From IMG/VR virus record IMGVR_UViG_3300027963_000035, positions 187,266 to 251,265 of that record: a DNA stretch of 64,000 bases, one strand, 5' to 3'. The stretch's first letter is position 1. Every line of letters begins with the position of its first letter. The notes beneath the pieces are model-generated. The model was not told where the DNA came from and did no database searches. It saw nothing but the letters and a program-made list of their open reading frames with translations. The position numbers and the translations under genes are program-made. Positions 20,794 to 40,780 of this stretch are shown piece after piece.

Positions 20794-21456
20794 ATGAAAT
20801 CAAATCATAATTTATGTCCTTCTTGTGGACGAGCTCTTAAAGGAACAAGAAGAAAGTTTTGCTCTACTGAATGCGTACTAAAATCAAGTAATTCAAAACA
20901 TCAAAATTACAAAAATCAGCACAGACGGGGCGTTTCAAAAAAAATGCAATTAATGAAGATGAAGGGAATGTCGTGTAAGGTATGTGGATACAAAAAGAAC
21001 TATGCAGCCATGGCCTTTCATCACAGAGATCCAAAGAAAAAATCACACGGTCTTGACTCTAGAGCATGTTCAAATATGTCTTGGAAGTCTTTAGTTCTGG
21101 AGGCGGAGAAGTGTGATTTGGTGTGCATGAATTGTCATATGGAAATTCATCATCCACAATTTGAGGCCGAAAATGCAAATAAAATAATGGATGATTTCGT
21201 TCAATTCAATCAAACCGAAGTAAATCAGCACCTTCTTAAACCCATGAATTGCGAGCGATGCGGCGTAGAATATCAACCCGATAAACACAAAAGAAAATTT
21301 TGTTCCGATAAATGTTATCGCTTAAACTCTAGAAGAGTAGAGCGGCCCTCCAAAGAACAACTTGAGAAAGACTTGTCTGAAATGAATTTTGTAAAGGTAG
21401 GCAAAAAATATGGTGTATCAGATAATGCAGTGAGAAAATGGCTTAAGAGCTATTAA
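20794..21456 (+). CDS. Free-standing HNH (His-Cys) endonuclease with zinc-ribbon and HTH tail
   Basis: CKVCGY...FHHRDP...KCDLVCMNCHMEIH; C-terminal VGKKYGVSDNAVRKWLK. Confidence 0.85.
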   Translation: MKSNHNLCPSCGRALKGTRRKFCSTECVLKSSNSKHQNYKNQHRRGVSKKMQLMKMKGMSCKVCGYKKNYAAMAFHHRDPKKKSHGLDSRACSNMSWKSLVLEAEKCDLVCMNCHMEIHHPQFEAENANKIMDDFVQFNQTEVNQHLLKPMNCERCGVEYQPDKHKRKFCSDKCYRLNSRRVERPSKEQLEKDLSEMNFVKVGKKYGVSDNAVRKWLKSY

Positions 21457-21497: not shown

Positions 21498-21500
21498 ACG

Positions 21501-21764
21501 TCCGAAGGGTGGGATTCGAACCCACAGTCTACAAATTCAAGTTTGTGTGATTTTCACCACTCCTTGGACTTTGTCTTCACCATATCTTACGATTTAGGTG
21601 GTCGCCGTTAAGTCTCTACACGTTCCCTTACGGGCTTCGCTCGGCATTGCCATATGCTCACGCATTTAGGTTTCACCGAATTTGACGACATCCCATACGA
21701 AGTTTCCAATCGTATGGCACGAAAATTCATGAGTTTGTTGCATTAACCGTTTTGCTACCTTCGG
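21501..21764 (-). tRNA. tRNA-CAT (probably Ile2) interrupted by a group I intron
   Basis: Spliced cloverleaf: acceptor CCGAAGG/CCTTCGG plus A, anticodon arm ACAAA-CTCAT^AA-TTTGT, T-arm GTGGG-TTCGAAT-CCCAC. Adjacent to tilS. Confidence 0.85.
21538..21728 (-). ncRNA. Group I intron (IC3, Azoarcus-like), 191 nt
   Basis: U before the 5' splice site; terminal G; IGS GTG; core AAATTCGGTGAAA, AATGCCGAGC, GTAGAGACT, AAGACAAAGTCC; CCTAA/TATGG tetraloop-receptor sequences. Confidence 0.9.
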
Positions 21765-21780
21765 AAATTAACCAACTGTG

Positions 21781-22434
21781 CTAGTCTAGAATTACCGTCT
21801 TATTCTTCAAGTTTTTTTCAATTCTCCTTGAACAATATTTTTCTAGACTTAACTTTTGTTTTTTCATTTCTGGAATGATTGTTTGACGAATCCAATTTCT
21901 TCTGCTTCCTTTGACAACCTTATTGGTTTCGTCCTCCACAGTATAGCAATTCCATTTATTCCTGTCAACGTACTCTTGAAAATCTTTTTTCTTACTTAAT
22001 AGAAAAGGATGGATGATCTTGAATCCATCGAACTCGCTAATTAATTCAAAAGGATTGTGATTGGGTTGTCCACGAAAACAATTAATTAAATAGCTTTCCA
22101 CATAATCATTGAGATGATGAGCAGTGATTACATAACCTTCGTAATCCACAACCTCTTTATAAAAATTTAAGCGGGCCTCCCTGCAATCTTTTTCTGTTTT
22201 TAAATTTTGGCCCTTACCCACAATGCCCTTTAATCCTAATTTACCACAAAGTTCATGGAACTTATTTTCCATGGCATGGTTCTGTTCTCTTAGATTATGA
22301 TTAAAGTGCAATGGAGTAATGTTGTATCCCTTGCTTCTCAACCAAAATAAAGAAGATACGCTATCGACACCCATGCTTACGGCAACATAGCAATGAGTTT
22401 CTTTTGAAACAATTTCTTTAATGATCTTGATCAA
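21781..22434 (-). CDS. tilS: tRNA(Ile)-lysidine synthetase, minimal PP-loop form
   Basis: VAVSMGVDS, HFNHNLR, TAHHLNDYVES, HPFL, EDETN, RNWIR. Confidence 0.85.
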   Translation of the reverse strand: MIKIIKEIVSKETHCYVAVSMGVDSVSSLFWLRSKGYNITPLHFNHNLREQNHAMENKFHELCGKLGLKGIVGKGQNLKTEKDCREARLNFYKEVVDYEGYVITAHHLNDYVESYLINCFRGQPNHNPFELISEFDGFKIIHPFLLSKKKDFQEYVDRNKWNCYTVEDETNKVVKGSRRNWIRQTIIPEMKKQKLSLEKYCSRRIEKNLKNKTVILD

Positions 22435-25418: not shown

Positions 25419-25704
25419 TATATTATTTAAAGTAGACTTCAGTAGCAGCACCCAAAGCAATTGATGATCCTGCTACAACACCAAATGTAAGGAGACATTG
25501 CCAAACAATTTCTCCTGTCAATCCACCCCAAATACCTGCAATTGCAATAACAGCAGAAGATAAAATCAAAAAGCAAAGGGTGGAACCAACGATCTTTTTT
25601 ATTTTTAGATTGTTGTTGTTATTGACGATTTTTTTCATGTTTTCCTTTAGTTGAATAAAAATTTAAAACTCTACTATATATATAGTATAAAGAGTTTTAA
25701 ATTT

Positions 25705-26163
25705 ATGAAATACACATACACACATGAAACTTTAAAAGAACTTGTTGAAAGTTCAACATCAGTGAGACAAGTTCTTTTTAAATTAAAATTAGTTGCTGCC
25801 GGTGGTAATTACGCCACAATAAAAGCATATATTAAGAAGTTTAATTTAGACACTTCTCACTTTAAGGGTCACGGATGGTCTAAAGGGTTTGTTCTACCAC
25901 CAAAAAAACCAATTGAATCATATCTTGTTAAAGGAAGTAACACTCAAAGTTTCAAACTAAAAAAGAAGTTAATTAGAGAAAAAATCTTTGAACATAAATG
26001 CATGAATTGCAAGAATACTCATTGGCTTGGGAATTTAATTCCAATAGAACTTCACCATAAAGATGGAGATTCTTCAAACAATGAGCTTTCTAATTTAGAA
26101 ATTCTTTGTTACAACTGCCACGGTTTGACACCAAACTTTCGTGGTAAAAACAAGAAAAAATAA
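25705..26163 (+). CDS. Free-standing HNH endonuclease
   Basis: KCMNC...ELHHKDGDSSNNELSNLEILCYNCH; the stop codon abuts the tRNA-Leu 3' end. Confidence 0.9.
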   Translation: MKYTYTHETLKELVESSTSVRQVLFKLKLVAAGGNYATIKAYIKKFNLDTSHFKGHGWSKGFVLPPKKPIESYLVKGSNTQSFKLKKKLIREKIFEHKCMNCKNTHWLGNLIPIELHHKDGDSSNNELSNLEILCYNCHGLTPNFRGKNKKK

Positions 26164-26164
26164 A

Positions 26165-26451
26165 TGCCAAAGGCGGGGGTCGAACCCGCACAGGATGTTA
26201 TCCCGAGGGATTTTCTTACCACTATAGTTTTCACTACCCTTGCGGTTTGTAGTCTGGACTTTACCTTCACCATAACTTCTCAGTTTTAGGTGCTGCCCGT
26301 CAAGTCTCTACACCTTCCTGATTTCTCAGGCTTGGCTCGGTATTAGCAGTTAAGCCTTCACCGAATTTGAGCAGTTCTGCTCTAAAAGTTTCCTTTTAGG
26401 CACTCAATTTAATATCAAGTCCCTTGCGTCTGCCTATTTCGCCACTTTGGC
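26165..26451 (-). tRNA. tRNA-Leu(TAA) interrupted by a group I intron after U34
   Basis: Acceptor GCCAAAG/CTTTGGC plus A; AGGGA-CTT^AAAA-TCCCT; long variable arm. Confidence 0.9.
26215..26416 (-). ncRNA. Group I intron, 202 nt
   Basis: IGS TT-GAG; core AAATTCGGTGAA, AATACCGAGC, GTAGAGACT, AAGGTAAAGTCC; terminal G. Confidence 0.9.
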
Positions 26452-26603: not shown

Positions 26604-27923
26604 TCATTTTACACCTTTAAGGTAATTTTTATATTCTTCTAAGAAAATCTTTTCTTCATTCTTTGGATTAGAATTAGAGTGGCCTTTTGCTTGAACAACT
26701 TTGTTATTTTTAATTTCAATTGTTACTAGTGGTTTTTGAATTTCAGAGTTTAACCTTAAAAACAAAATAGTAGAATTCTTATTAGCGATATCTTCGTCAT
26801 AGCTTGCAACGCAATGATTTAGCTTTATTCCTTCTTGAATTAAATCCTCGTGTTTAACTGGGGCTATTACGCTATACCTTTCATTTTTATATTCATATTT
26901 TTTAAAAGTTTTGCAAACTTTAGAGAACCTATTTTTAAAAGTTCTACTTTTTAAGACCTCATAATTTTTGCTAGTTATATCATGAAGTGTTTTAAGATAT
27001 CTTGGATACTTATCAAAATCATTTTTCATTTGAACGTTCATTTTTGCATAATCATGAAGAATTGATAATGCATCTTCAATATCTTCAATTCCCTGATTAG
27101 GCAACCCCCTGCAAATATAATCTGTTAATTTAAATTTGTCATAACCCATCTTTATTAAGATATTAAAATATTCATCGTGCATATCTGGAAACCGATTATA
27201 GTTGTCAATTGCATACTTTATCACATCTACATTTTTAACCTCGCACCACCGTTCCAGAGTTGCATAATCGACTAATCTCATATAATCAGCCGGAACACTA
27301 CTATATTCAGCAACCATTGTATCTAATTTTTCAATATAGTAATCCAAGCTATACTTTTTAAAATCACTTATAGTTTTAATATTATAATCAAAATAGATTT
27401 GTGCGAATTCTAGATGGTGGAATTTTTCTTTATTTTTTTGTAAAAAGTCCCACTTTGCAAATTTTTCAAAATCCCCCATAATCACAGGATTATTTAAAAT
27501 ACTAAAAAGATCGCTCCTATCAGGTACATAGTAATCTTCACGGCTGGTGATAATGAAGAATAACTGAATCCATTCTTCTTTGCACAATTTATAAATATCT
27601 TTATCTCTCGCCAATCCAGAAAGATTGCCAGATGCAAATTTTATACATGACTTAGGATTTTTAATAAGAGTATTTGTCTCTGCGTCATAGAACTTATTAT
27701 CAATCAGAGAATATTTAACATTTGTTTTGTTGCTAAAATTAAAAATTAAACTTTTCTTGTCCTCAGACTCACTAACACTTTTCAAGTATTGATAGTGCTT
27801 AATTTTTGATTCTTTTTTCTTCTTTTCAGCTAAATGTATTTGGTTTATAAGTTCTTTGGTTGTGAAACCATTAACTTGTATAGTTGCTGTTTTCTTGCCA
27901 TTATTAATTTTGATTGTTCTCAT
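26604..27923 (-). CDS. PcfJ-domain protein
   Basis: DYAKM...KYPRYLKTLHD...DLIQEGIKLNHCVASY...LFLR...VTIEI...QAKGHSN. The real start is probably the ATG at 27923, because the longer ORF call extends into the array. Confidence 0.85.
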   Translation of the reverse strand: MRTIKINNGKKTATIQVNGFTTKELINQIHLAEKKKKESKIKHYQYLKSVSESEDKKSLIFNFSNKTNVKYSLIDNKFYDAETNTLIKNPKSCIKFASGNLSGLARDKDIYKLCKEEWIQLFFIITSREDYYVPDRSDLFSILNNPVIMGDFEKFAKWDFLQKNKEKFHHLEFAQIYFDYNIKTISDFKKYSLDYYIEKLDTMVAEYSSVPADYMRLVDYATLERWCEVKNVDVIKYAIDNYNRFPDMHDEYFNILIKMGYDKFKLTDYICRGLPNQGIEDIEDALSILHDYAKMNVQMKNDFDKYPRYLKTLHDITSKNYEVLKSRTFKNRFSKVCKTFKKYEYKNERYSVIAPVKHEDLIQEGIKLNHCVASYDEDIANKNSTILFLRLNSEIQKPLVTIEIKNNKVVQAKGHSNSNPKNEEKIFLEEYKNYLKGVK

Positions 27924-27935
27924 TTTACTTGTTAT

Positions 27936-28625
27936 GGACACCCTGTTCGTTATTAAAATCAGAGGGTTTTGGTTCACTCTCGCACATTGTTAAAATCGCA
28001 CAGCTAGGTTCACTAAACCATCATGTTAAATCTTCTTATTTGGTTCACTCTCGCACATTGTTAAAATACCGGCACTAGGTTCACTCTTCACGCATGTAAA
28101 ATCAGATTTTATGGTTCACTCGACAACTATGTTAAAATCGAAGGGCTAGGTTCACTCTTCATCTATGTTAAAATCAAGCAGGTTGGTTCACTCAACTACC
28201 TTGTTAAAATATCGAATGATGGTTCACTCACCAAATTTGTTAAAATTCCCGACTGTGGTTCACTCCAGAGGTCTGTTTAAATCCGGACATATGGTTCACT
28301 CGAATGCGGTGTTAAAATCGCCGTTTGTGATTCACTCACTATACATGTAAAATCTCTCACATTGGTTCACTTAACTACCTTGTTGAAATCGTCGGGCTTG
28401 GTTCGCTCCGGCAGTATGTAAAAATCCAGTCTGATGACTCACTCAACGTTCATGTTAAAATCGTTAATAATGGTTCACTTCTCGTCCTTGTTAAAATCAA
28501 GCAGGTTGGTTCACTCCGGCAAAATGAAAAAATCTGGGCTTCTGGTTCACTCATGGACGCATGTTAAAATCAAGGAAACTGGTTCACTCTTGACTTTTGT
28601 TAAAATCTCAGCCACTGGTTCACTC
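27936..28625 (-). repeat. TIGR-like dual-repeat guide-RNA array (~18 full 36-nt units plus one degenerate terminal unit)
   Basis: The + strand unit is GGTTCACTC-N8-TGTTAAAATC-N9. There are 19 GGTTCACTC-type boxes from 27971 to 28625 with a 35-37 nt period, and the variable segments are mostly unique. Confidence 0.9.
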
Positions 28626-32252: not shown

Positions 32253-33131
32253 TCAAACCGTACCGGAAGGAAACTCGAGTGTTTCAAAAACACTTTCAAG
32301 TTCTTCTGATAATCTTCCTTTGATTACTTCGACTGCATATTGATAAAGAAATTCTGGACTAGTCTTGATGACTTCTTCTGCTTCAATCCATCTTCCTTTA
32401 ATTACATCTTTAGCGTAACCACAGGCATACTCTGGACTAGTTTTTATGGTTTCTTCTGCGTCAACCCAGCGACCTTCGATTACGTCTCTAGCATAATAAT
32501 AGGCATATCGTGGATCAGTTTTAATAATCCCTTCTGATTCGATCCATCTGCCTTTAATTATATCTTTGGCGTAAAGATACATATAGTGGATTAAAACCCT
32601 CTCAGCTTCAATCCATCTATCTTTTAGGACATCTTTGGTGTAATAGTAAACATATGCAGGACTAGTTTTAATAATTTTTTCTGCTTCAATCCAGCGATCT
32701 TTAATTATATCTCTAGCATAGAGATAGGCATAATATGGGTCAGTCTTAATAATCTCTTCTGCTTCATTCCAACGATTTTTAATTACATCTCTGGAATAAA
32801 GATAAGCATACTGGGGATCACTCTTGATAATCTCTTCGCACTCAATCCACCGTCCCTTGATAACATCTTTGGCATAATGATGGATATATTCTGGACGGCT
32901 ATTCTTTATGATTTCTTCAACTTCAATCCACCGGTCTTTAATTACATCCCTAGCATAGCAGTAAGCATAATATGGTTCTGTCTTAATAATTGAAAACAAA
33001 GCTGTCTTTTGAATATTGTTGGGCTTTTCCCCATTAATCATAGTTCCATTTTTAATGAAACAATCAACATCCTCATAAGTAACGTTTGAGATGAACTGGT
33101 GATATTTTTCTGAGTAACTAGTCATTTTCAC
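32253..33131 (-). CDS. Tandem ~25-aa repeat protein (YAYxYARDVIKGRWIEAEEIIKTSP, ~10 repeats)
   Basis: Repeats are directly visible in both protein and DNA. Confidence 0.8.
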   Translation of the reverse strand: MKMTSYSEKYHQFISNVTYEDVDCFIKNGTMINGEKPNNIQKTALFSIIKTEPYYAYCYARDVIKDRWIEVEEIIKNSRPEYIHHYAKDVIKGRWIECEEIIKSDPQYAYLYSRDVIKNRWNEAEEIIKTDPYYAYLYARDIIKDRWIEAEKIIKTSPAYVYYYTKDVLKDRWIEAERVLIHYMYLYAKDIIKGRWIESEGIIKTDPRYAYYYARDVIEGRWVDAEETIKTSPEYACGYAKDVIKGRWIEAEEVIKTSPEFLYQYAVEVIKGRLSEELESVFETLEFPSGTV

Positions 33132-33380: not shown

Positions 33381-33399
33381 TGTTTTTTTCTTTGGCCAG

Positions 33400-33499
33400 G
33401 GCGAATGGGTGGAATCGAACCACCACAAGGGCATTTGTTTGCCTACTCTGCTGTCGCAGTTCGGAACTTCCCTCACGCTACCACTACGCTACATTCACC
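33400..33499 (-). tRNA. tRNA-His-like RNA or pseudogene with aberrant, expanded anticodon arm
   Basis: G-1:C73 plus GTGAATG/CATTCGC; D-arm GCGT-AGTGGTA-GCGT; T-arm GGTGG-TTCGATT-CCACC. The anticodon loop is replaced by ~38 nt with no GTG. Confidence 0.6.
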
Positions 33500-37895: not shown

Positions 37896-39691
37896 TATAA
37901 TTCCAACATTCTACTTTTTTAATTTGATTTGATTTATCAAACCATTTATCTCCTTCAATGTATTTGTTTGCTTCTTCTACATTAGAAAGTTTAAGAATAA
38001 CTCTATAAGAACGTAGTCCAATTTTTTCAAATGTATCCAAATAACGCCAAAATAACCACCCCTTTTTCTTGACTTGATACCATTCTTTTCCGTTACCATC
38101 AACAAATTTACAAATTTTGTATTTAGTCACTTTTCTACCCAGGGTCTTGCGAGTAATAAGCCGGTGTTCGATCATCTTGCAGAAAATCGTATTGCGATGC
38201 AATTACAGCAAAATATATCCCTAATGAGCCGTTTTTTGATCTTCTTCCTTCACAACATCCATAAATATTTTTTTCTAAATCATTGTAAAAATTATACCTC
38301 AGTGATTGATCTACAAAATATTTCATTTCTTCTATAATGTTTGATTTATGATGATCCATCTTACAAAATGGAATGTAAATATTTAATTTTTTTGCTCTTT
38401 CTAGCATTTCAGACTTAGAAATAACACACAAATTTTTTCCTTTGTATATTGTCTGGTGTTCTTTAGTTCTTAAATATGCACCGTATGAATTTTTAAAAAC
38501 TAAAATTCCAGCCATTGTTGGCAACAAAGATTTAATAAGACTTCTTCTGTTCATTTCTTTTCTCCTTGGTTGTTTTTTTCCATCTCAGAGTTTACTTCAC
38601 CCTTCAGCATAACTAAATCCAATCTAATATTTTTTACATCTTCACTTATTTTGTATGAAATAAAAGTCATTATGAATGCCAACATCATAATGATAATCGT
38701 GATAAATAAAATAATTGCTTTAAGTAATTTATCGTTTTCGTTCATTTCTTGTCTCCGTATATAAATTTCCACTCTGATAAGTCTGTATCAACACCAGCAG
38801 CATCCCTAATACCATAAATGGTCTTGGGATCATGGTCGTATTTATGATTACGAATTTCTTTGGTTATTCTGAAGTTCATAATAGGTTGTGTTCTTTAAGA
38901 GTTTGATATAAATTTTTTACTTCTTTTTCGTCCAGCCTTATTTCGCTGGGGTCAGTATTGTTATAACTAAATACTCTGACCAAGTAAGGTTTATTTTTCA
39001 AAAACTCATTATAATGAATCTCAACAATATCATATTCAAGATTCAGAGTTCTTACTAGAGTTTGCATTTAAAACTCTTAGCGATATGCCGCTCATTGAAC
39101 ATTGTATATGTCAAATGGGCCAAAGAATCCTCTTTCTATGATTTGATTGACAAACAATTTAATATCCTCAATAGAAGGGTTTCCTGTTTCATTTTCAACT
39201 TCTATTGTTATTAGAGTTTTCATAATTTTTCTTATATTAAAACCTAATCACTTTATAATCATTACCAACTTTACAGTTTATACTTCCATGCAAACCTGGG
39301 AGGATGATATTAGCAATGATTAACTCTGCCCCAATTACTTTATTCTTACTGTAGACTTCTTGGGCTATTTTAACATCTTCTAAAGAGGCAGGACGAGATC
39401 CTCTTTCATTAAAGTCTTTGATAACCTTAGTTCTATTCTCATCATTAGAACTTGAGCAATCGTCTAAGATTTTTTCTTCTTCTTCTGAAAACTTTGGAGA
39501 AAGTCTTTCAATCCATTTATCATCTATCAAACAAAGGCATCGTGTCATTTTCCCTCCTTGGAAAAATGTTAGTGGGTGCTAATAGCATACCAGAAATTTT
39601 TGTTTCGTCAATAGAAAGTTACATCATGATTGAATTTATTTATAAAATTATGGTTCAATGCATATATATAAATATATTAAAGGTTCAAGTC

Positions 39692-40258
39692 ATGAAAGTA
39701 AAAGATAAAATATTAGAATTAAGGGCATTGGGATATTCATATAAAAAAATCCAAGATGAGATCAAGTGCTCAAAAGGAACAATATCGTATCATTGTGGTG
39801 AAGGTCAAAAAGAAAAATACGCCAAAAGACGTAAATCAAACAGATCTAAACAGCATCCTTTGATTCGCAAGATTGAAAATTTTATTTATGATAAATACTA
39901 CAAACCTGTTCCGAAGAATAGGCATATTCATACATTGCACAAAAACCTGAAGATAAGGATAGAAGGATTCTCTAGAGTTAACAAGGAGTATGCTGGCATG
40001 GAATTTACAATTAAAGATTTTTTAGATAAGGTTGGAGATAATCCAACATGCTCATTAACTGGAAAACCAATTGATTTAATGAAACCTAGAACATATCAAT
40101 TGGATCATATAATCCCAAGATCTAAGGGGGGAGAAAATACTCTAAATAACTGTCAGCTTGTTCTCAAGGAAGTCAATTTAGCAAAACATACTTTAAGCTC
40201 AGAAGAGTTTGTTAAATTATGCAGAGAAGTTGTTGATTATCACGATAGAAAAAACTAA
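39692..40258 (+). CDS. Free-standing HNH endonuclease with N-terminal HTH
   Basis: ILELRALGYSYKKIQ...CSKGTISYH; CSLTG...QLDHIIPRSKGGENTLNNCQLV...VNLAK. Confidence 0.9.
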   Translation: MKVKDKILELRALGYSYKKIQDEIKCSKGTISYHCGEGQKEKYAKRRKSNRSKQHPLIRKIENFIYDKYYKPVPKNRHIHTLHKNLKIRIEGFSRVNKEYAGMEFTIKDFLDKVGDNPTCSLTGKPIDLMKPRTYQLDHIIPRSKGGENTLNNCQLVLKEVNLAKHTLSSEEFVKLCREVVDYHDRKN

Positions 40259-40297
40259 TCAAAGTTTGTAGCTCTTTATATTCAAACCAGCTTGTAG

Positions 40298-40438
40298 CTC
40301 CGTGACTTGGATTTGAACCAAGAACCATTCGATTAATCCACTGTTTGGGCATTGAACCCAACATAAATTGCCAGCTTTTTTGAGCTTCAATTCAGTGGCT
40401 TTTTACAGTCGAACACTCTACCGTTGAGTTATCACGGA
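40298..40438 (-). tRNA. tRNA-Asn(GTT) with a 69-nt structured insertion in the anticodon
   Basis: Acceptor TCCGTGA/TCACGGA plus G73; TTCGA-CTGT[insert 40336-40404]TAA-TCGAA; T-arm CTTGG-TTCAAAT-CCAAG. Confidence 0.75.
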
Positions 40439-40503: not shown

Positions 40504-40780
40504 TGACCCAGCCAAGGATCGAACTTGGAACCTACAGCTTAGCGGTACCACTATAGTTTTCACTACCATTACTGTTTGTGGTCTGGACTTTATCTTCACC
40601 ATTGTCTTTCAACTTTAGGTGTCGCCTGTTAAGTCTCTACACCTTCCTAATTGCTTAGGCTTGGCTCGGTATTAGCAGTTAAGCCTTCACCGAATTTAAG
40701 CGATTCTACATTAAAGATTTCTCTCTAAGCACTCCTATTTCACGAAGGCTGTTGCTCTTATCCAATTGAGCTACTGGGCC
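40504..40780 (-). tRNA. tRNA-Arg(TCT) interrupted by a group I intron after U34
   Basis: Acceptor GGCCCAG/CTGGGTC plus A; ACAGC-CTT^CTAA-GCTGT; A20-type D-loop. Confidence 0.85.
40543..40744 (-). ncRNA. Group I intron, 202 nt, close relative of the tRNA-Leu intron
   Basis: IGS TAG-GAG; terminal G; shares long identical blocks with 26215-26416, e.g. AAATTCGGTGAAGGCTTAACTGCTAATACCGAGCCAAGCCT and GGTAGTGAAAACTATAGTGGTA. Confidence 0.9.

What the first reader, a model, noticed from the sequence alone, without database searches (positions are those of the whole stretch)
40504..40780. Apparent intron transposition between tRNA-Leu(UAA) and tRNA-Arg(UCU)
Seen: both introns are 202 nt, share long identical blocks, and insert after CUU (U34). 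The P10 part of the IGS differs to match each 3' exon (TT for AA, TAG for CTA). Known: the Leu(UAA) U34 site is the classic cyanobacterial/plastid site. I am not aware of an Arg(UCU) U34 site being well described. Inference: spread by reverse splicing followed by IGS adaptation.
Basis: partly seen in the sequence, partly recalled or inferred. Interest (0 to 1): 0.6.

Follow-up and report, generated by a model that had tools for sequence, protein, structure and literature searches.

The report
Hopping self-splicing introns in phage tRNAs
A giant bacteriophage carries closely related 202-base self-splicing (group I) introns at the same spot in the anticodon loops of three different tRNA genes, so this intron has moved between tRNA genes; that behaviour is known in principle, and this insertion site has already been catalogued in bacteria.

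Summary
Window 40504-40780(-) is a tRNA-Arg(UCU) gene split after U34 (CUU|) by a 202-nt group I (IC3-like) intron. Window 26165-26451(-) is a tRNA-Leu(UAA) gene split at the same position by a homologous 202-nt intron (84% identity over 189 nt, E 4e-54). The bases 5' of the internal guide GAG pair with each 3' exon (UAG/CUA in Arg, UU/AA in Leu). This covariation holds across 41 related phage introns.

A third 202-nt paralogue lies outside the window in tRNA-Gln(UUG), and it is the Arg intron's closest relative (91% against 81% for Leu). About 200 nt cannot resolve which intron gave rise to which. A 96%-identical sister phage keeps the Arg intron but has intronless tRNA-Leu and tRNA-Gln genes with different exons. 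HNH endonuclease genes abut every intron-bearing tRNA gene. This suggests DNA-level homing of whole cassettes, alongside an older switch of host tRNA at CUU loops. Reverse splicing fits that switch but is unproven, and no reverse transcriptase was found in the contig.

The Arg U34 site is not new: "Arg.3Ug" is in the Williams 2020 seed alignment with the same UAG-GAG guide. This is a new member of a known kind, in a roughly 0.5-Mb phage.

The parts
40745..40780 (-). tRNA-Arg(UCU) 5' exon (36 nt), ending ...ACAGC-CUU (U34 = U-1 of the intron)
   Evidence: Read from the sequence. ARAGORN with introns allowed. The U-1/omega-G rule gives one solution only.
40543..40744 (-). 202-nt ORF-less group I (IC3-like) intron of tRNA-Arg(UCU). 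Omega-G is at 40543.
   Evidence: Rfam RF00028, 59.3 bits, E 1.6e-12, model positions 1-253. In the family alignment, 29 of 43 predicted pairs are kept through compensatory changes. It is 99.5% identical to the intron in sister phage G001.
40732..40737 (-). Internal guide sequence. UAG (40735-40737) is the P10 guide pairing with 3' exon CUA. GAG (40732-40734) is the P1 guide pairing with 5' exon CUU, with a G.U wobble at the splice site.
   Evidence: The UAG guide is present in 5 of 5 distinct Arg(UCU) introns.
40504..40542 (-). tRNA-Arg(UCU) 3' exon (39 nt), starting CUAA-GCUGU
   Evidence: The ligated junction is found uninterrupted in at least 119 phage tRNA-Arg genes.
26417..26451 (-). tRNA-Leu(UAA) 5' exon (35 nt), ending ...AGGGA-CUU
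26215..26416 (-). 202-nt group I intron of tRNA-Leu(UAA), a paralogue of the Arg intron. Its guide is UU|GAG at 26403-26407.
   Evidence: blastn 83.6% over 189 nt, E 3.75e-54. RF00028 scored 50.8 bits in the whole-contig scan..
26165..26214 (-). tRNA-Leu(UAA) 3' exon (50 nt, with a long variable arm), starting AAAA-UCCCU
39452..40258 (+). Free-standing HNH endonuclease gene (268 aa) on the opposite strand. It lies 39 nt from the 3' end of tRNA-Asn and about 245 nt from tRNA-Arg.
   Evidence: Pfam HNH_4 3.9e-7 and HNH 4.3e-6. phrog_6050 1.7e-26. In G001 it is reduced to an 87-aa remnant.
25651..26163 (+). Free-standing HNH endonuclease gene (170 aa) ending 1 nt from the 3' end of the intron-bearing tRNA-Leu gene
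   Evidence: phrog_10822 2e-37. It is 35% identical to the HNH next to the Gln intron. Both this gene and the intron are absent at the G001 Leu locus. The same arrangement is seen in L025, L009 and L130.
21500..21764 (-). tRNA(CAU) gene with a 191-nt Azoarcus-type group I intron after U36 (intron 21538-21728). This intron is a more distant member of the family, about 65% identical.
   Evidence: RF00028 59.2 bits.. Identical in G001.
20794..21456 (+). HNH endonuclease gene (220 aa) abutting the 3' end of the intron-bearing tRNA(CAU) gene
   Evidence: phrog_2255 2.9e-19. It shares a C-terminal domain with the HNH next to the Gln intron.

Best explanation
The window is the last 64 kb of a 251-kb fragment of a roughly 0.5-Mb bacteriophage. 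The phage's tRNA genes have been colonised by one family of small (about 200 nt), ORF-less group I (IC3-like) self-splicing introns. Three close paralogues, each 202 nt, sit after U34 in anticodon loops that begin C32-U33-U34. Their hosts are tRNA-Arg(UCU) and tRNA-Leu(UAA) in the window and tRNA-Gln(UUG) outside it.

Each intron should splice by the standard group I route. The guide GAG pairs with the exon CUU to form P1, with a U.G wobble at the splice site. Exogenous G attacks the 5' splice site. The bases just 5' of GAG pair with the first 2-3 bases of the 3' exon to form P10, and omega-G defines the 3' splice site. Splicing would restore the loops CUUCUAA, CUUAAAA and CUUUGGA.

Shown here: the three introns are homologous, their exons are not, the P10 guide is tuned to the host, helices are kept by compensatory changes, and related phages differ in whether they carry the intron.

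Inferred: the family has switched host tRNA more than once. The Arg copy of this lineage derives from a Gln/Leu-type copy. The step that changes host most likely goes through RNA, by reverse splicing into any tRNA whose loop offers CUU to the GAG guide. That would be followed by cDNA synthesis and recombination, and then by selection retuning the P10 guide. I put about 0.4 on this mechanism. Once resident, the intron spreads between co-infecting phages at the DNA level, together with its exons and the adjacent free-standing HNH endonuclease gene, by collaborative or intronless homing of whole cassettes.
For: Intron identity and structure: RF00028 hits above the gathering score. U-1 and omega-G give a unique solution. 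In 31 family members, 29 of 43 consensus pairs show compensatory changes.

Homology against exons: introns are 81-91% identical and exons 54-60%. The high-identity block between Arg and Gln begins at the GAG guide and ends at GUGGUA.

Target rule: among 97 tRNA-hosted phage introns sampled, all hosts with the intron after position 34 have U34. Almost all have a CUU loop start: Leu UAA 38, Arg UCU 9, Gln UUG 5, Lys UUU 3, Thr UGU 2, Pro UGG 1, Ala UGC 1.

P10 tuning: guides form on average 2.46 of 3 base pairs with their own 3' exon and 0.51 with the 3' exons of other hosts. No permutation out of 20000 reached the observed value.

Host switch in this lineage: the Arg intron is 91% identical to the phage's own Gln intron. 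It is 87% identical to the Gln intron of G002 and to the Leu intron of L009. It is only 69-70% identical to every other phage Arg(UCU) intron. The ML clade Arg+Gln has 100/97 support. The distant relative G002 has an intron in Gln but an intronless tRNA-Arg(UCU).

DNA-level spread: sister phage G001 (96% identity over 216 kb) has intronless tRNA-Leu and tRNA-Gln genes with divergent exons, and lacks the phrog_10822 HNH genes at those syntenic sites. HNH genes abut all four intron-bearing tRNA genes. An HNH-like ORF lies within 500 nt of 21 of 73 other phage tRNA introns, about 8 times the background density.
Against: No reverse transcriptase (PF00078) was found in the contig, although the contig is only about half the genome and a host RT could serve.

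The phylogeny is weak at about 200 nt. The AU test does not reject a single origin of all Arg(UCU) introns (p 0.17), nor Leu+Arg as exclusive sisters (p about 0.5). The topology changes with the alignment method.

The 9% divergence between the Arg and Gln introns exceeds the 4% divergence between the two phage genomes. The switch was therefore not a recent event inside this genome, and it may have happened in another phage or in a bacterium.

The anticodon-arm DNA of Gln and Arg shares CAGNCTT just upstream of the insertion site. A relaxed-specificity endonuclease could therefore also explain ectopic insertion.
Confidence: 0.55

Rival explanations
1. DNA-level ectopic homing. One of the free-standing HNH endonucleases has relaxed specificity and cut the anticodon-loop DNA of a different tRNA gene. 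The break was repaired from an intron-containing tRNA gene using microhomology around CTT. No RNA intermediate was needed.
For: HNH genes abut all four intron-bearing tRNA genes and are enriched next to phage tRNA introns in general. The Leu- and Gln-adjacent HNH proteins are homologous (35% identity, E 7e-28). No RT was found in the contig. The review PMC3984707 describes ectopic integration through relaxed homing-endonuclease specificity, and collaborative homing.
Against: Double-strand-break repair normally needs exon homology and co-converts the flanks. The Arg, Gln and Leu exons share no more than generic tRNA similarity. The HNH next to Arg is unrelated to those next to Gln and Leu. The only feature common to all hosts is the 3-nt CUU, which matches the RNA guide and is much shorter than a typical endonuclease site.
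Confidence: 0.25
2. No transposition took place in this phage lineage. The intron-bearing tRNA-Arg(UCU) gene was acquired whole, already adapted, from another phage or bacterium that carries the catalogued Arg.3Ug class. Its resemblance to the resident Leu and Gln introns only reflects membership of the same widespread family.
For: Whole-cassette replacement is seen directly at the Leu and Gln loci between this phage and G001. Arg.3Ug with the same AAUA-GGAG guide exists in a bacterial genome and in other phages. The AU test does not reject a single clade of all Arg introns (p 0.17).
Against: The other Arg(UCU) introns found are only 69-70% identical, against 91% for the phage's own Gln intron and 87% for the G002 Gln and L009 Leu introns. 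The ML tree needs 3 changes for the Arg label, and well-supported branches force 3. The core-pattern scan of one genome per species (GTDB) found no Arg(UCU) intron with this core.
Confidence: 0.15
3. An intron-containing tRNA gene was duplicated and then remoulded, through changes to the anticodon and identity elements, so the intron never moved.
For: All three genes lie in one genome and their introns are the same length, 202 nt.
Against: The exons are 54-60% identical and differ in class: Leu has a long variable arm and Arg and Gln do not. The introns are 81-91% identical. Similarity drops at the splice sites. The equal length is a coincidence of different indels in the P5/P6/P8 loops.
Confidence: 0.03

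Closest known systems
[quoted passage not shown]
   Same: It has the same insertion site (CUU|AAAA, after U34), the same U-1/omega-G rule, the same GAG-type guide and a small ORF-less ribozyme core. The window's Leu intron is a member of this class.
   Different: Here it lies in a phage genome, next to a free-standing HNH gene, and has close paralogues in two other tRNA genes. A 96%-identical sister phage lacks it.
'Arg.3Ug' class of bacterial tRNA introns (Rba190.Arg.3Ug in the seed alignment of Williams 2020, bioRxiv 10.1101/2020.01.27.920355)
   Same: The tRNA-Arg is split after CUU, with the guide AAUA-GGAG-UGC, followed by P2 with a GAAA loop and the same core blocks (AAAUUCGG.GAA, CCGAGCC, GGUGUAGAGACU, AGUCCA).
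   Different: The bacterial example is GC-rich and has longer peripheral loops. The class is listed only in a preprint table and seed alignment, with no study of its origin. The copy here is phage-borne and groups with Gln and Leu introns rather than with other Arg introns.
Azoarcus tRNA-Ile(CAU) and alpha-proteobacterial tRNA-Arg(CCU) introns ('Ile2.5Ug', 'Arg.5Ug'). Paquin, Heinfling and Shub (J Bacteriol 1999) proposed transposition of a group I intron between tRNA genes; I cite this from memory and did not read it here.
   Same: These are small IC3 introns in anticodon loops. The idea that one intron family moved between different tRNA genes is the same. The window's tRNA(CAU) intron at 21538-21728 is of the Azoarcus type, inserted after U36 with a CAU/GUG P1.
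   Different: Those introns sit after position 36, not 34. The genome scan here found Arg(CCU).5 in many proteobacteria but no Arg(UCU).3.
Collaborative (trans) homing of ORF-less group I introns with adjacent free-standing homing endonucleases (phage psbA and DNA polymerase systems, reviewed in PMC3984707)
   Same: An ORF-less intron lies beside a free-standing endonuclease gene, and related phages differ in whether they carry the pair.
   Different: The hosts here are tRNA genes, and several unrelated HNH families are involved. Whether these enzymes cut the intron insertion site has not been tested.
[quoted passage not shown]
   Same: Related introns lie at heterologous sites that share only a short match to the guide sequence.
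   Different: The targets are anticodon loops of different tRNAs rather than sites within one rRNA. As in rDNA, there is no direct evidence.

Membership tests
Group I intron (Rfam RF00028; IC3-like tRNA introns) | Match to the covariance model above the curated threshold over the whole core | tested here: met
   Arg intron: 59.3 bits against gathering score 50, model positions 1-253. Leu intron: 50.8 bits in the whole-contig scan, but missed in the window scans.
Group I intron (Rfam RF00028; IC3-like tRNA introns) | U at -1 forming a U.G wobble with the internal guide (P1), and G at the 3' end (omega-G) | tested here: met
   CUU|...G| is the only split that restores a 7-nt loop with U-1 and omega-G. 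GAG lies 10-11 nt into the intron.
Group I intron (Rfam RF00028; IC3-like tRNA introns) | P10 pairing between the guide and the 3' exon | tested here: met
   UAG/CUA in Arg, UU/AA in Leu, CUG/UGG in Gln. Family-wide, 2.46 of 3 bp with the intron's own exon against 0.51 with other hosts' exons; permutation 0 of 20000.
Group I intron (Rfam RF00028; IC3-like tRNA introns) | Conserved helices P2-P9 maintained by compensatory substitutions | tested here: met
   RNAalifold on 31 members: 29 of 43 pairs have changes on both sides. P7 is a pseudoknot and was not modelled. Its strands GAGACU and AGUC are invariant.
Group I intron (Rfam RF00028; IC3-like tRNA introns) | Self-splicing with guanosine and Mg2+ | not testable with these tools
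Arg.3Ug class (Williams 2020) | tRNA-Arg split between loop positions 3 and 4 (after U34) with U-1 and omega-G | tested here: met
   The seed member Rba190.Arg.3Ug has the same CUU|C..AAUA-GGAG-UGC start.
Transposition by reverse splicing | Homologous introns at non-homologous sites that share only a short complement to the guide | tested here: met
   Introns 81-91% identical against exons 54-60%. All hosts with the intron after position 34 have U34, and nearly all have a CUU loop start.
Transposition by reverse splicing | A reverse transcriptase available to copy the recombinant RNA | tested here: not met
   No PF00078 match in the 251-kb contig. This is inconclusive for the whole system, because the contig is about 50% complete and host enzymes were not examined.
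Transposition by reverse splicing | Demonstrated integration of intron RNA into the target RNA | not testable with these tools
   This needs a bench assay.
Collaborative / intronless homing with a free-standing endonuclease | An endonuclease gene adjacent to an ORF-less intron | tested here: met
   HNH ORFs at window 39452-40258, 25651-26163 and 20794-21456, and at G000:143622-144305. An HNH-like ORF is nearby in 21 of 73 other loci.
Collaborative / intronless homing with a free-standing endonuclease | Presence/absence polymorphism among close relatives, with co-conversion of the flanks | tested here: met
   G001 (96% identity) lacks the Leu and Gln introns and their phrog_10822 HNH genes, and has divergent exons at the syntenic sites.
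Collaborative / intronless homing with a free-standing endonuclease | The endonuclease cleaves the intronless allele at or near the intron insertion site | not testable with these tools
   This needs a cleavage assay.

The most novel reading that the evidence does not exclude
In jumbo phages, a small ORF-less IC3 ribozyme is actively moving at the RNA level, by reverse splicing, into any tRNA whose anticodon loop starts with CUU. So far it is seen in Leu, Arg, Gln, Lys, Thr, Pro and Ala tRNAs. After each move it retunes its P10 guide, while unrelated free-standing HNH endonucleases then drive each new intron-plus-tRNA cassette through phage populations. This would be a natural system with recent intermediates in which reverse-splicing mobility, so far supported only by circumstantial evidence, could be demonstrated directly.
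Probability: 0.25. Interest if true: 0.7.

Novelty: new member of a known kind. Interest (0 to 1): 0.45.

Why it matters
Group I introns are thought to reach new sites by reverse splicing, but the evidence is circumstantial and comes mostly from rDNA (PMC3984707). This phage offers a compact natural case.

- It has three paralogous 202-nt introns in three unrelated tRNA genes that share only the 3-nt guide complement CUU.
- The P10 guides are tuned to each host.
- A 96%-identical sister phage lacks two of the three introns.
- A more distant relative has an intronless Arg gene.
- Candidate homing endonucleases lie next to each intron-bearing tRNA gene.

Together these make RNA-level and DNA-level mobility separately testable with short synthetic substrates.

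There is also a practical point. Standard tRNA finders miss these genes or mis-call them. ARAGORN reads the Gln(UUG) genes as a UGA-suppressor 'SeC(UCA)', which could wrongly suggest stop-codon recoding in huge phages.

Tried and rejected
- **RNA evidence for splicing.** I did not try another route, and read laying was not used.
- **Bacterial relatives.** They were Arg(CCU) after position 36, Leu(CAA) after 33 and Leu(UAA). None was an Arg(UCU) intron. The pattern needs exact matches, so this says little about absence.
- **Reverse transcriptase.** PF00078 was not found in the contig.
- **Phylogeny.** AU tests were inconclusive: all Arg introns as one clade, p 0.17; own Leu plus Arg as an exclusive clade, p 0.47-0.51. 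A second alignment method (MAFFT localpair) moved Lys and Ser introns into the Gln group. I therefore do not claim a donor.
- **Locating the guide automatically.** Taking the last candidate position picked GAG motifs inside P2 and gave noisy guides. I discarded that result and used the first candidate, which is chosen without reference to P10.
- **ARAGORN intron calls.** Calls such as 'SeC(tca)', 'Stop(tta)' and 'Pyl(cta)' were re-derived with the U-1/omega-G rule. Several stayed unresolved and were left out of the trees, as were introns longer than 240 nt and locus L127, which is the same record as G001.
- **The 69-nt insert in tRNA-Asn.** No Rfam family matched even at E up to 10 on the 181-nt stretch, and blast found no similarity to the group I introns.
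- **Spliced sequences.** The joined form was used only as a 22-base junction pattern in the DNA search and inside scripts.

Full report
**Context.** The window is G000:C1:187266-251265, the last 64 kb of a 251,265-bp IMG/VR viral contig. It has 35% G+C, and CheckV estimates about 50% completeness, implying a phage genome of roughly 0.5 Mb. Genes are short, densely packed and mostly on the minus strand. All tRNA genes are on the minus strand.

**Checking the observation.**
- Read on the minus strand, window 40780-40504 is a tRNA gene with the layout GGCCCAG-UA-GCUC...GAGC-A-ACAGC-CUU | 202 nt | CUAA-GCUGU-AGGUU-CCAAG-UUCGAUC-CUUGG-CUGGGUC-A.
- Rfam scores the insert as Intron_gpI at 59.3 bits (gathering score 50, E 1.6e-12, whole model).
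- blastn of this pre-tRNA against the window finds a second copy at 26217-26405: 83.6% over 189 nt, E 3.75e-54.
- That copy lies in a tRNA-Leu(UAA) gene at 26165-26451(-), and its intron is also 202 nt.
- The window-wide Rfam scans missed the Leu intron. The whole-contig scan scored it 50.8 bits.
- For both genes, only the split CUU|...G| restores a 7-nt loop with U at -1 and G at the intron's 3' end.

- The contig holds four group I introns. A 191-nt Azoarcus-type intron sits after U36 of a tRNA(CAU) gene at window 21500-21764(-). It is only about 65% identical to the others.
- A third 202-nt intron lies outside the window at G000:144281-144554(-). ARAGORN calls its host 'SeC(UCA)'. The U-1/omega-G rule, and homology with the other two introns, place the splice sites at CUU|...GGUAAG|UGGA. 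That gives the loop CUUUGGA, which is tRNA-Gln(UUG).
- The intronless tRNA-Gln of the sister phage has the same loop.
- Pairwise intron identities are Arg-Gln 91%, Leu-Gln 83% and Leu-Arg 81%. The corresponding exons are 54-60% identical, which is no more than generic tRNA similarity.
- The equal length of 202 nt is coincidental, because the indels lie in different loops.

**The introns look functional.**
- A MAFFT/RNAalifold analysis of 31 family members recovers P2, P3, P4, P5, P6, P8 and P9. Compensatory changes on both sides occur in 29 of 43 pairs.
- I located the guide as the first G that can pair with the last three exon bases, a choice made without reference to P10. The three preceding bases then form on average 2.46 of 3 contiguous pairs with the intron's own 3' exon. 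With the 3' exons of other host tRNAs the figure is 0.51.
- In permutations of exons among introns, 0 of 20000 reached the observed value for all 41 distinct introns, and 4 of 20000 for the 14 non-Leu introns.
- Guides by host: Leu AAAA with UU(U); Arg CUAA with UAG in 5 of 5 distinct introns; Gln UGGA with CUG or UCG; Thr GUAA with UAC; Lys UUAA with UAG. These sequences are related, so the permutation count is not a strict probability.
- The predicted ligated Arg anticodon arm, used as a 22-base junction pattern, is uninterrupted in at least 119 phage tRNA-Arg(UCU) genes.

**Distribution in phages.**
- Four pattern scans of IMG/VR with ARAGORN post-processing gave 97 tRNA-hosted introns with this core.
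- After position 34 the hosts were Leu(UAA) 38, Arg(UCU) 9, Gln(UUG) 5, Lys(UUU) 3, Thr(UGU) 2, Pro(UGG) 1 and Ala(UGC) 1.
- Other insertion positions were also seen: Asn(GUU) and Tyr after position 35, and CAU tRNAs after 33 or 36.
- All hosts with the intron after position 34 have U34, and nearly all have a CUU loop start, which is the complement of the GAG guide.

**Phylogeny.**
- An IQ-TREE analysis of 75 introns joins (own Arg, G001 Arg) at 100/98 with (own Gln, G002 Gln) at 97/73. The combined clade has 100/97 support. The phage's own Leu intron is the next branch, but with only 70/25 support.
- The other phage Arg(UCU) introns lie elsewhere on the tree and are only 69-70% identical to this one. 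The ML tree needs three changes for the Arg label.
- AU tests reject neither a single Arg clade (p 0.17) nor own Leu plus Arg as exclusive sisters (p about 0.5). A different alignment method alters the local topology.
- About 200 nt is too little to name a donor. By identity and by the ML tree, the Arg copy derives from a Gln/Leu-type intron rather than from the other Arg introns.

**Comparison with relatives.**
- IMGVR_UViG_3300023174_000040 (G001, 323 kb) is 96% identical to this contig over 216 kb.
- G001 has the Arg intron with a single difference in 202 nt, and an identical CAU intron.
- Its tRNA-Leu(UAA) (G001:113382-113467) and tRNA-Gln(UUG) (G001:186340-186412) are intronless and have clearly different exons. 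They lie at syntenic positions between conserved flanks. Whole tRNA cassettes have therefore been exchanged there.
- A distant relative, G002 (about 71% identity over 44 kb), shares the arrangement of tRNA-Thr(UGU) followed by tRNA-Gln(UUG) with an intron. Its tRNA-Arg(UCU) is intronless.

**Endonucleases.**
- In this phage, every intron-bearing tRNA gene is abutted at its 3' end by an opposite-strand HNH endonuclease ORF.
  - Window 25651-26163 lies next to Leu (phrog_10822, 2e-37).
  - Window 20794-21456 lies next to CAU (phrog_2255, 2.9e-19).
  - Window 39452-40258 lies next to Asn and Arg (Pfam HNH_4/HNH; phrog_6050, 1.7e-26).
  - G000:143622-144305 lies next to Gln (phrog_10822, 9e-46).
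- The Leu- and Gln-adjacent proteins are 35% identical. The Arg-adjacent protein is unrelated to them.
- In G001 the Leu locus has no HNH gene, the Gln locus has an HNH of a different family, and the Arg/Asn HNH is an 87-aa remnant.
- Among other phage contigs, 21 of 73 tRNA-hosted introns have an HNH-like ORF within 500 nt. The background is about 0.26 such ORFs per 10 kb.
- This matches the collaborative or intronless homing described in PMC3984707.
- No reverse transcriptase was found in the contig.

**Literature.**
- The classical bacterial tRNA intron classes are Leu.3Ug, fMet.2Ug, Ile2.5Ug and Arg.5Ug.
- Williams (bioRxiv 10.1101/2020.01.27.920355) expanded them to 21 settings.
- The seed alignment of that preprint includes Rba190.Arg.3Ug, which starts CUU|C-AAUA-GGAG-UGCA. 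It has the same site and the same guide as here. It also includes Lys.3Ug and Thr.3Ug. No 'Gln' entry appears in the seed, and the full table is an image that I could not read.
- The review PMC3984707 states that reverse splicing lacks direct experimental support.
- A 2026 jumbo-phage survey mentions intronic sequences in phage tRNAs without analysing them.
- I found no paper on paralogous group I introns in phage tRNA genes, but only open-access texts were searched.

**Conclusion.** The feature is real, and it is a bona fide group I intron family. It has changed tRNA host at loops that begin CUU, and its P10 guides are tuned to each host. Reverse splicing is the best fit for the host-changing step, at about 0.4, but it is unproven. 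DNA-level homing of cassettes with HNH genes is evident for spread between phages. The Arg U34 site has been catalogued before, so this is a new, phage-borne member of a known kind.

Noticed in passing
window 40297-40438 (-); also L212:10877-11019 (+) and L369:385-522 (-): tRNA-Asn(GUU) carries a 65-69-nt insert in the anticodon loop after CUGU that is not a group I intron. There is no omega-G: it ends GGAU in two phages and GGAA in the third. No Rfam family matches. The insert is about 92% conserved between this phage and G001, and present again in G002, while the exons differ with compensatory stem changes. It folds into a closing stem CCACUG/CAGUGG, a small hairpin, and a T-arm-like hairpin (UUGGG-UUCAAUG-CCCAA) next to the closing stem. 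How it is removed, or whether it is removed at all, is unknown. It may be the more novel element in this window.
   Followed up: partly
window 33399-33498 (-): tRNA-Gly(UCC) has a short insert in or next to the anticodon loop: 27 nt after position 37 by ARAGORN, or 38 nt by the Rfam tRNA alignment. The gene and insert are identical in sister phage G001. The insert is too short for a group I intron and is unexplained.
   Followed up: partly
G000:C1:144281-144554 (-) = L001:1444-1717 (outside the window): This is the third 202-nt paralogue of the intron, in tRNA-Gln(UUG). ARAGORN mis-calls the gene as a UGA-reading 'SeC(UCA)' tRNA. The same mis-call occurs in L013, L103 and L128. Such calls could wrongly suggest stop-codon recoding in huge phages.
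   Followed up: yes
window 21500-21764 (-) and 21781-22434 (-): A tRNA(CAU) gene has a 191-nt Azoarcus-type intron after U36. Directly upstream is a PP-loop (TilS-like, PF01171, 7e-26) ORF. This suggests the tRNA is a lysidine-modified tRNA-Ile2 supplied together with its modifying enzyme.
   Followed up: partly
window 20794-21456 (+), 25651-26163 (+), 39452-40258 (+): In a window whose genes run mostly on the minus strand, these three plus-strand ORFs are each an HNH endonuclease gene abutting the 3' end of an interrupted tRNA gene. HNH-like ORFs are also enriched next to tRNA introns in other phage contigs (21 of 73).
   Followed up: yes
window 26215-26416 (-): The Rfam scans of the 64-kb window, at both the gathering and the E<=1 thresholds, missed the Leu intron entirely. 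The genome search scan of the whole contig with the same model scored it 50.8 bits. A blank from the window scan is therefore not evidence of absence.
   Followed up: yes
window 26604-27977 (-): A PcfJ-like protein (PF14284, 7.5e-25) is encoded just upstream of tRNA-Leu. Its counterpart in G001 is only 67-80% identical in DNA, in contrast to the 96% genome-wide identity.
   Followed up: no
window about 27950-28625 and 32312-32990: blastn against G001 gives many staggered, overlapping HSPs at 67-80% identity in these two stretches. This indicates internally repetitive sequence (tandem or dispersed repeats) inside ORFs.
   Followed up: no
G002 (IMGVR_UViG_3300027741_000022) 119619-119891 and 120415-120688: ARAGORN calls two adjacent tRNA-Leu(UAA) genes about 500 nt apart in a distant relative, with introns of 198 and 200 nt. 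The whole-record Rfam scan scored an intron only in the second, at 120439-120624. The splice sites were not re-derived with the U-1/omega-G rule.
   Followed up: no
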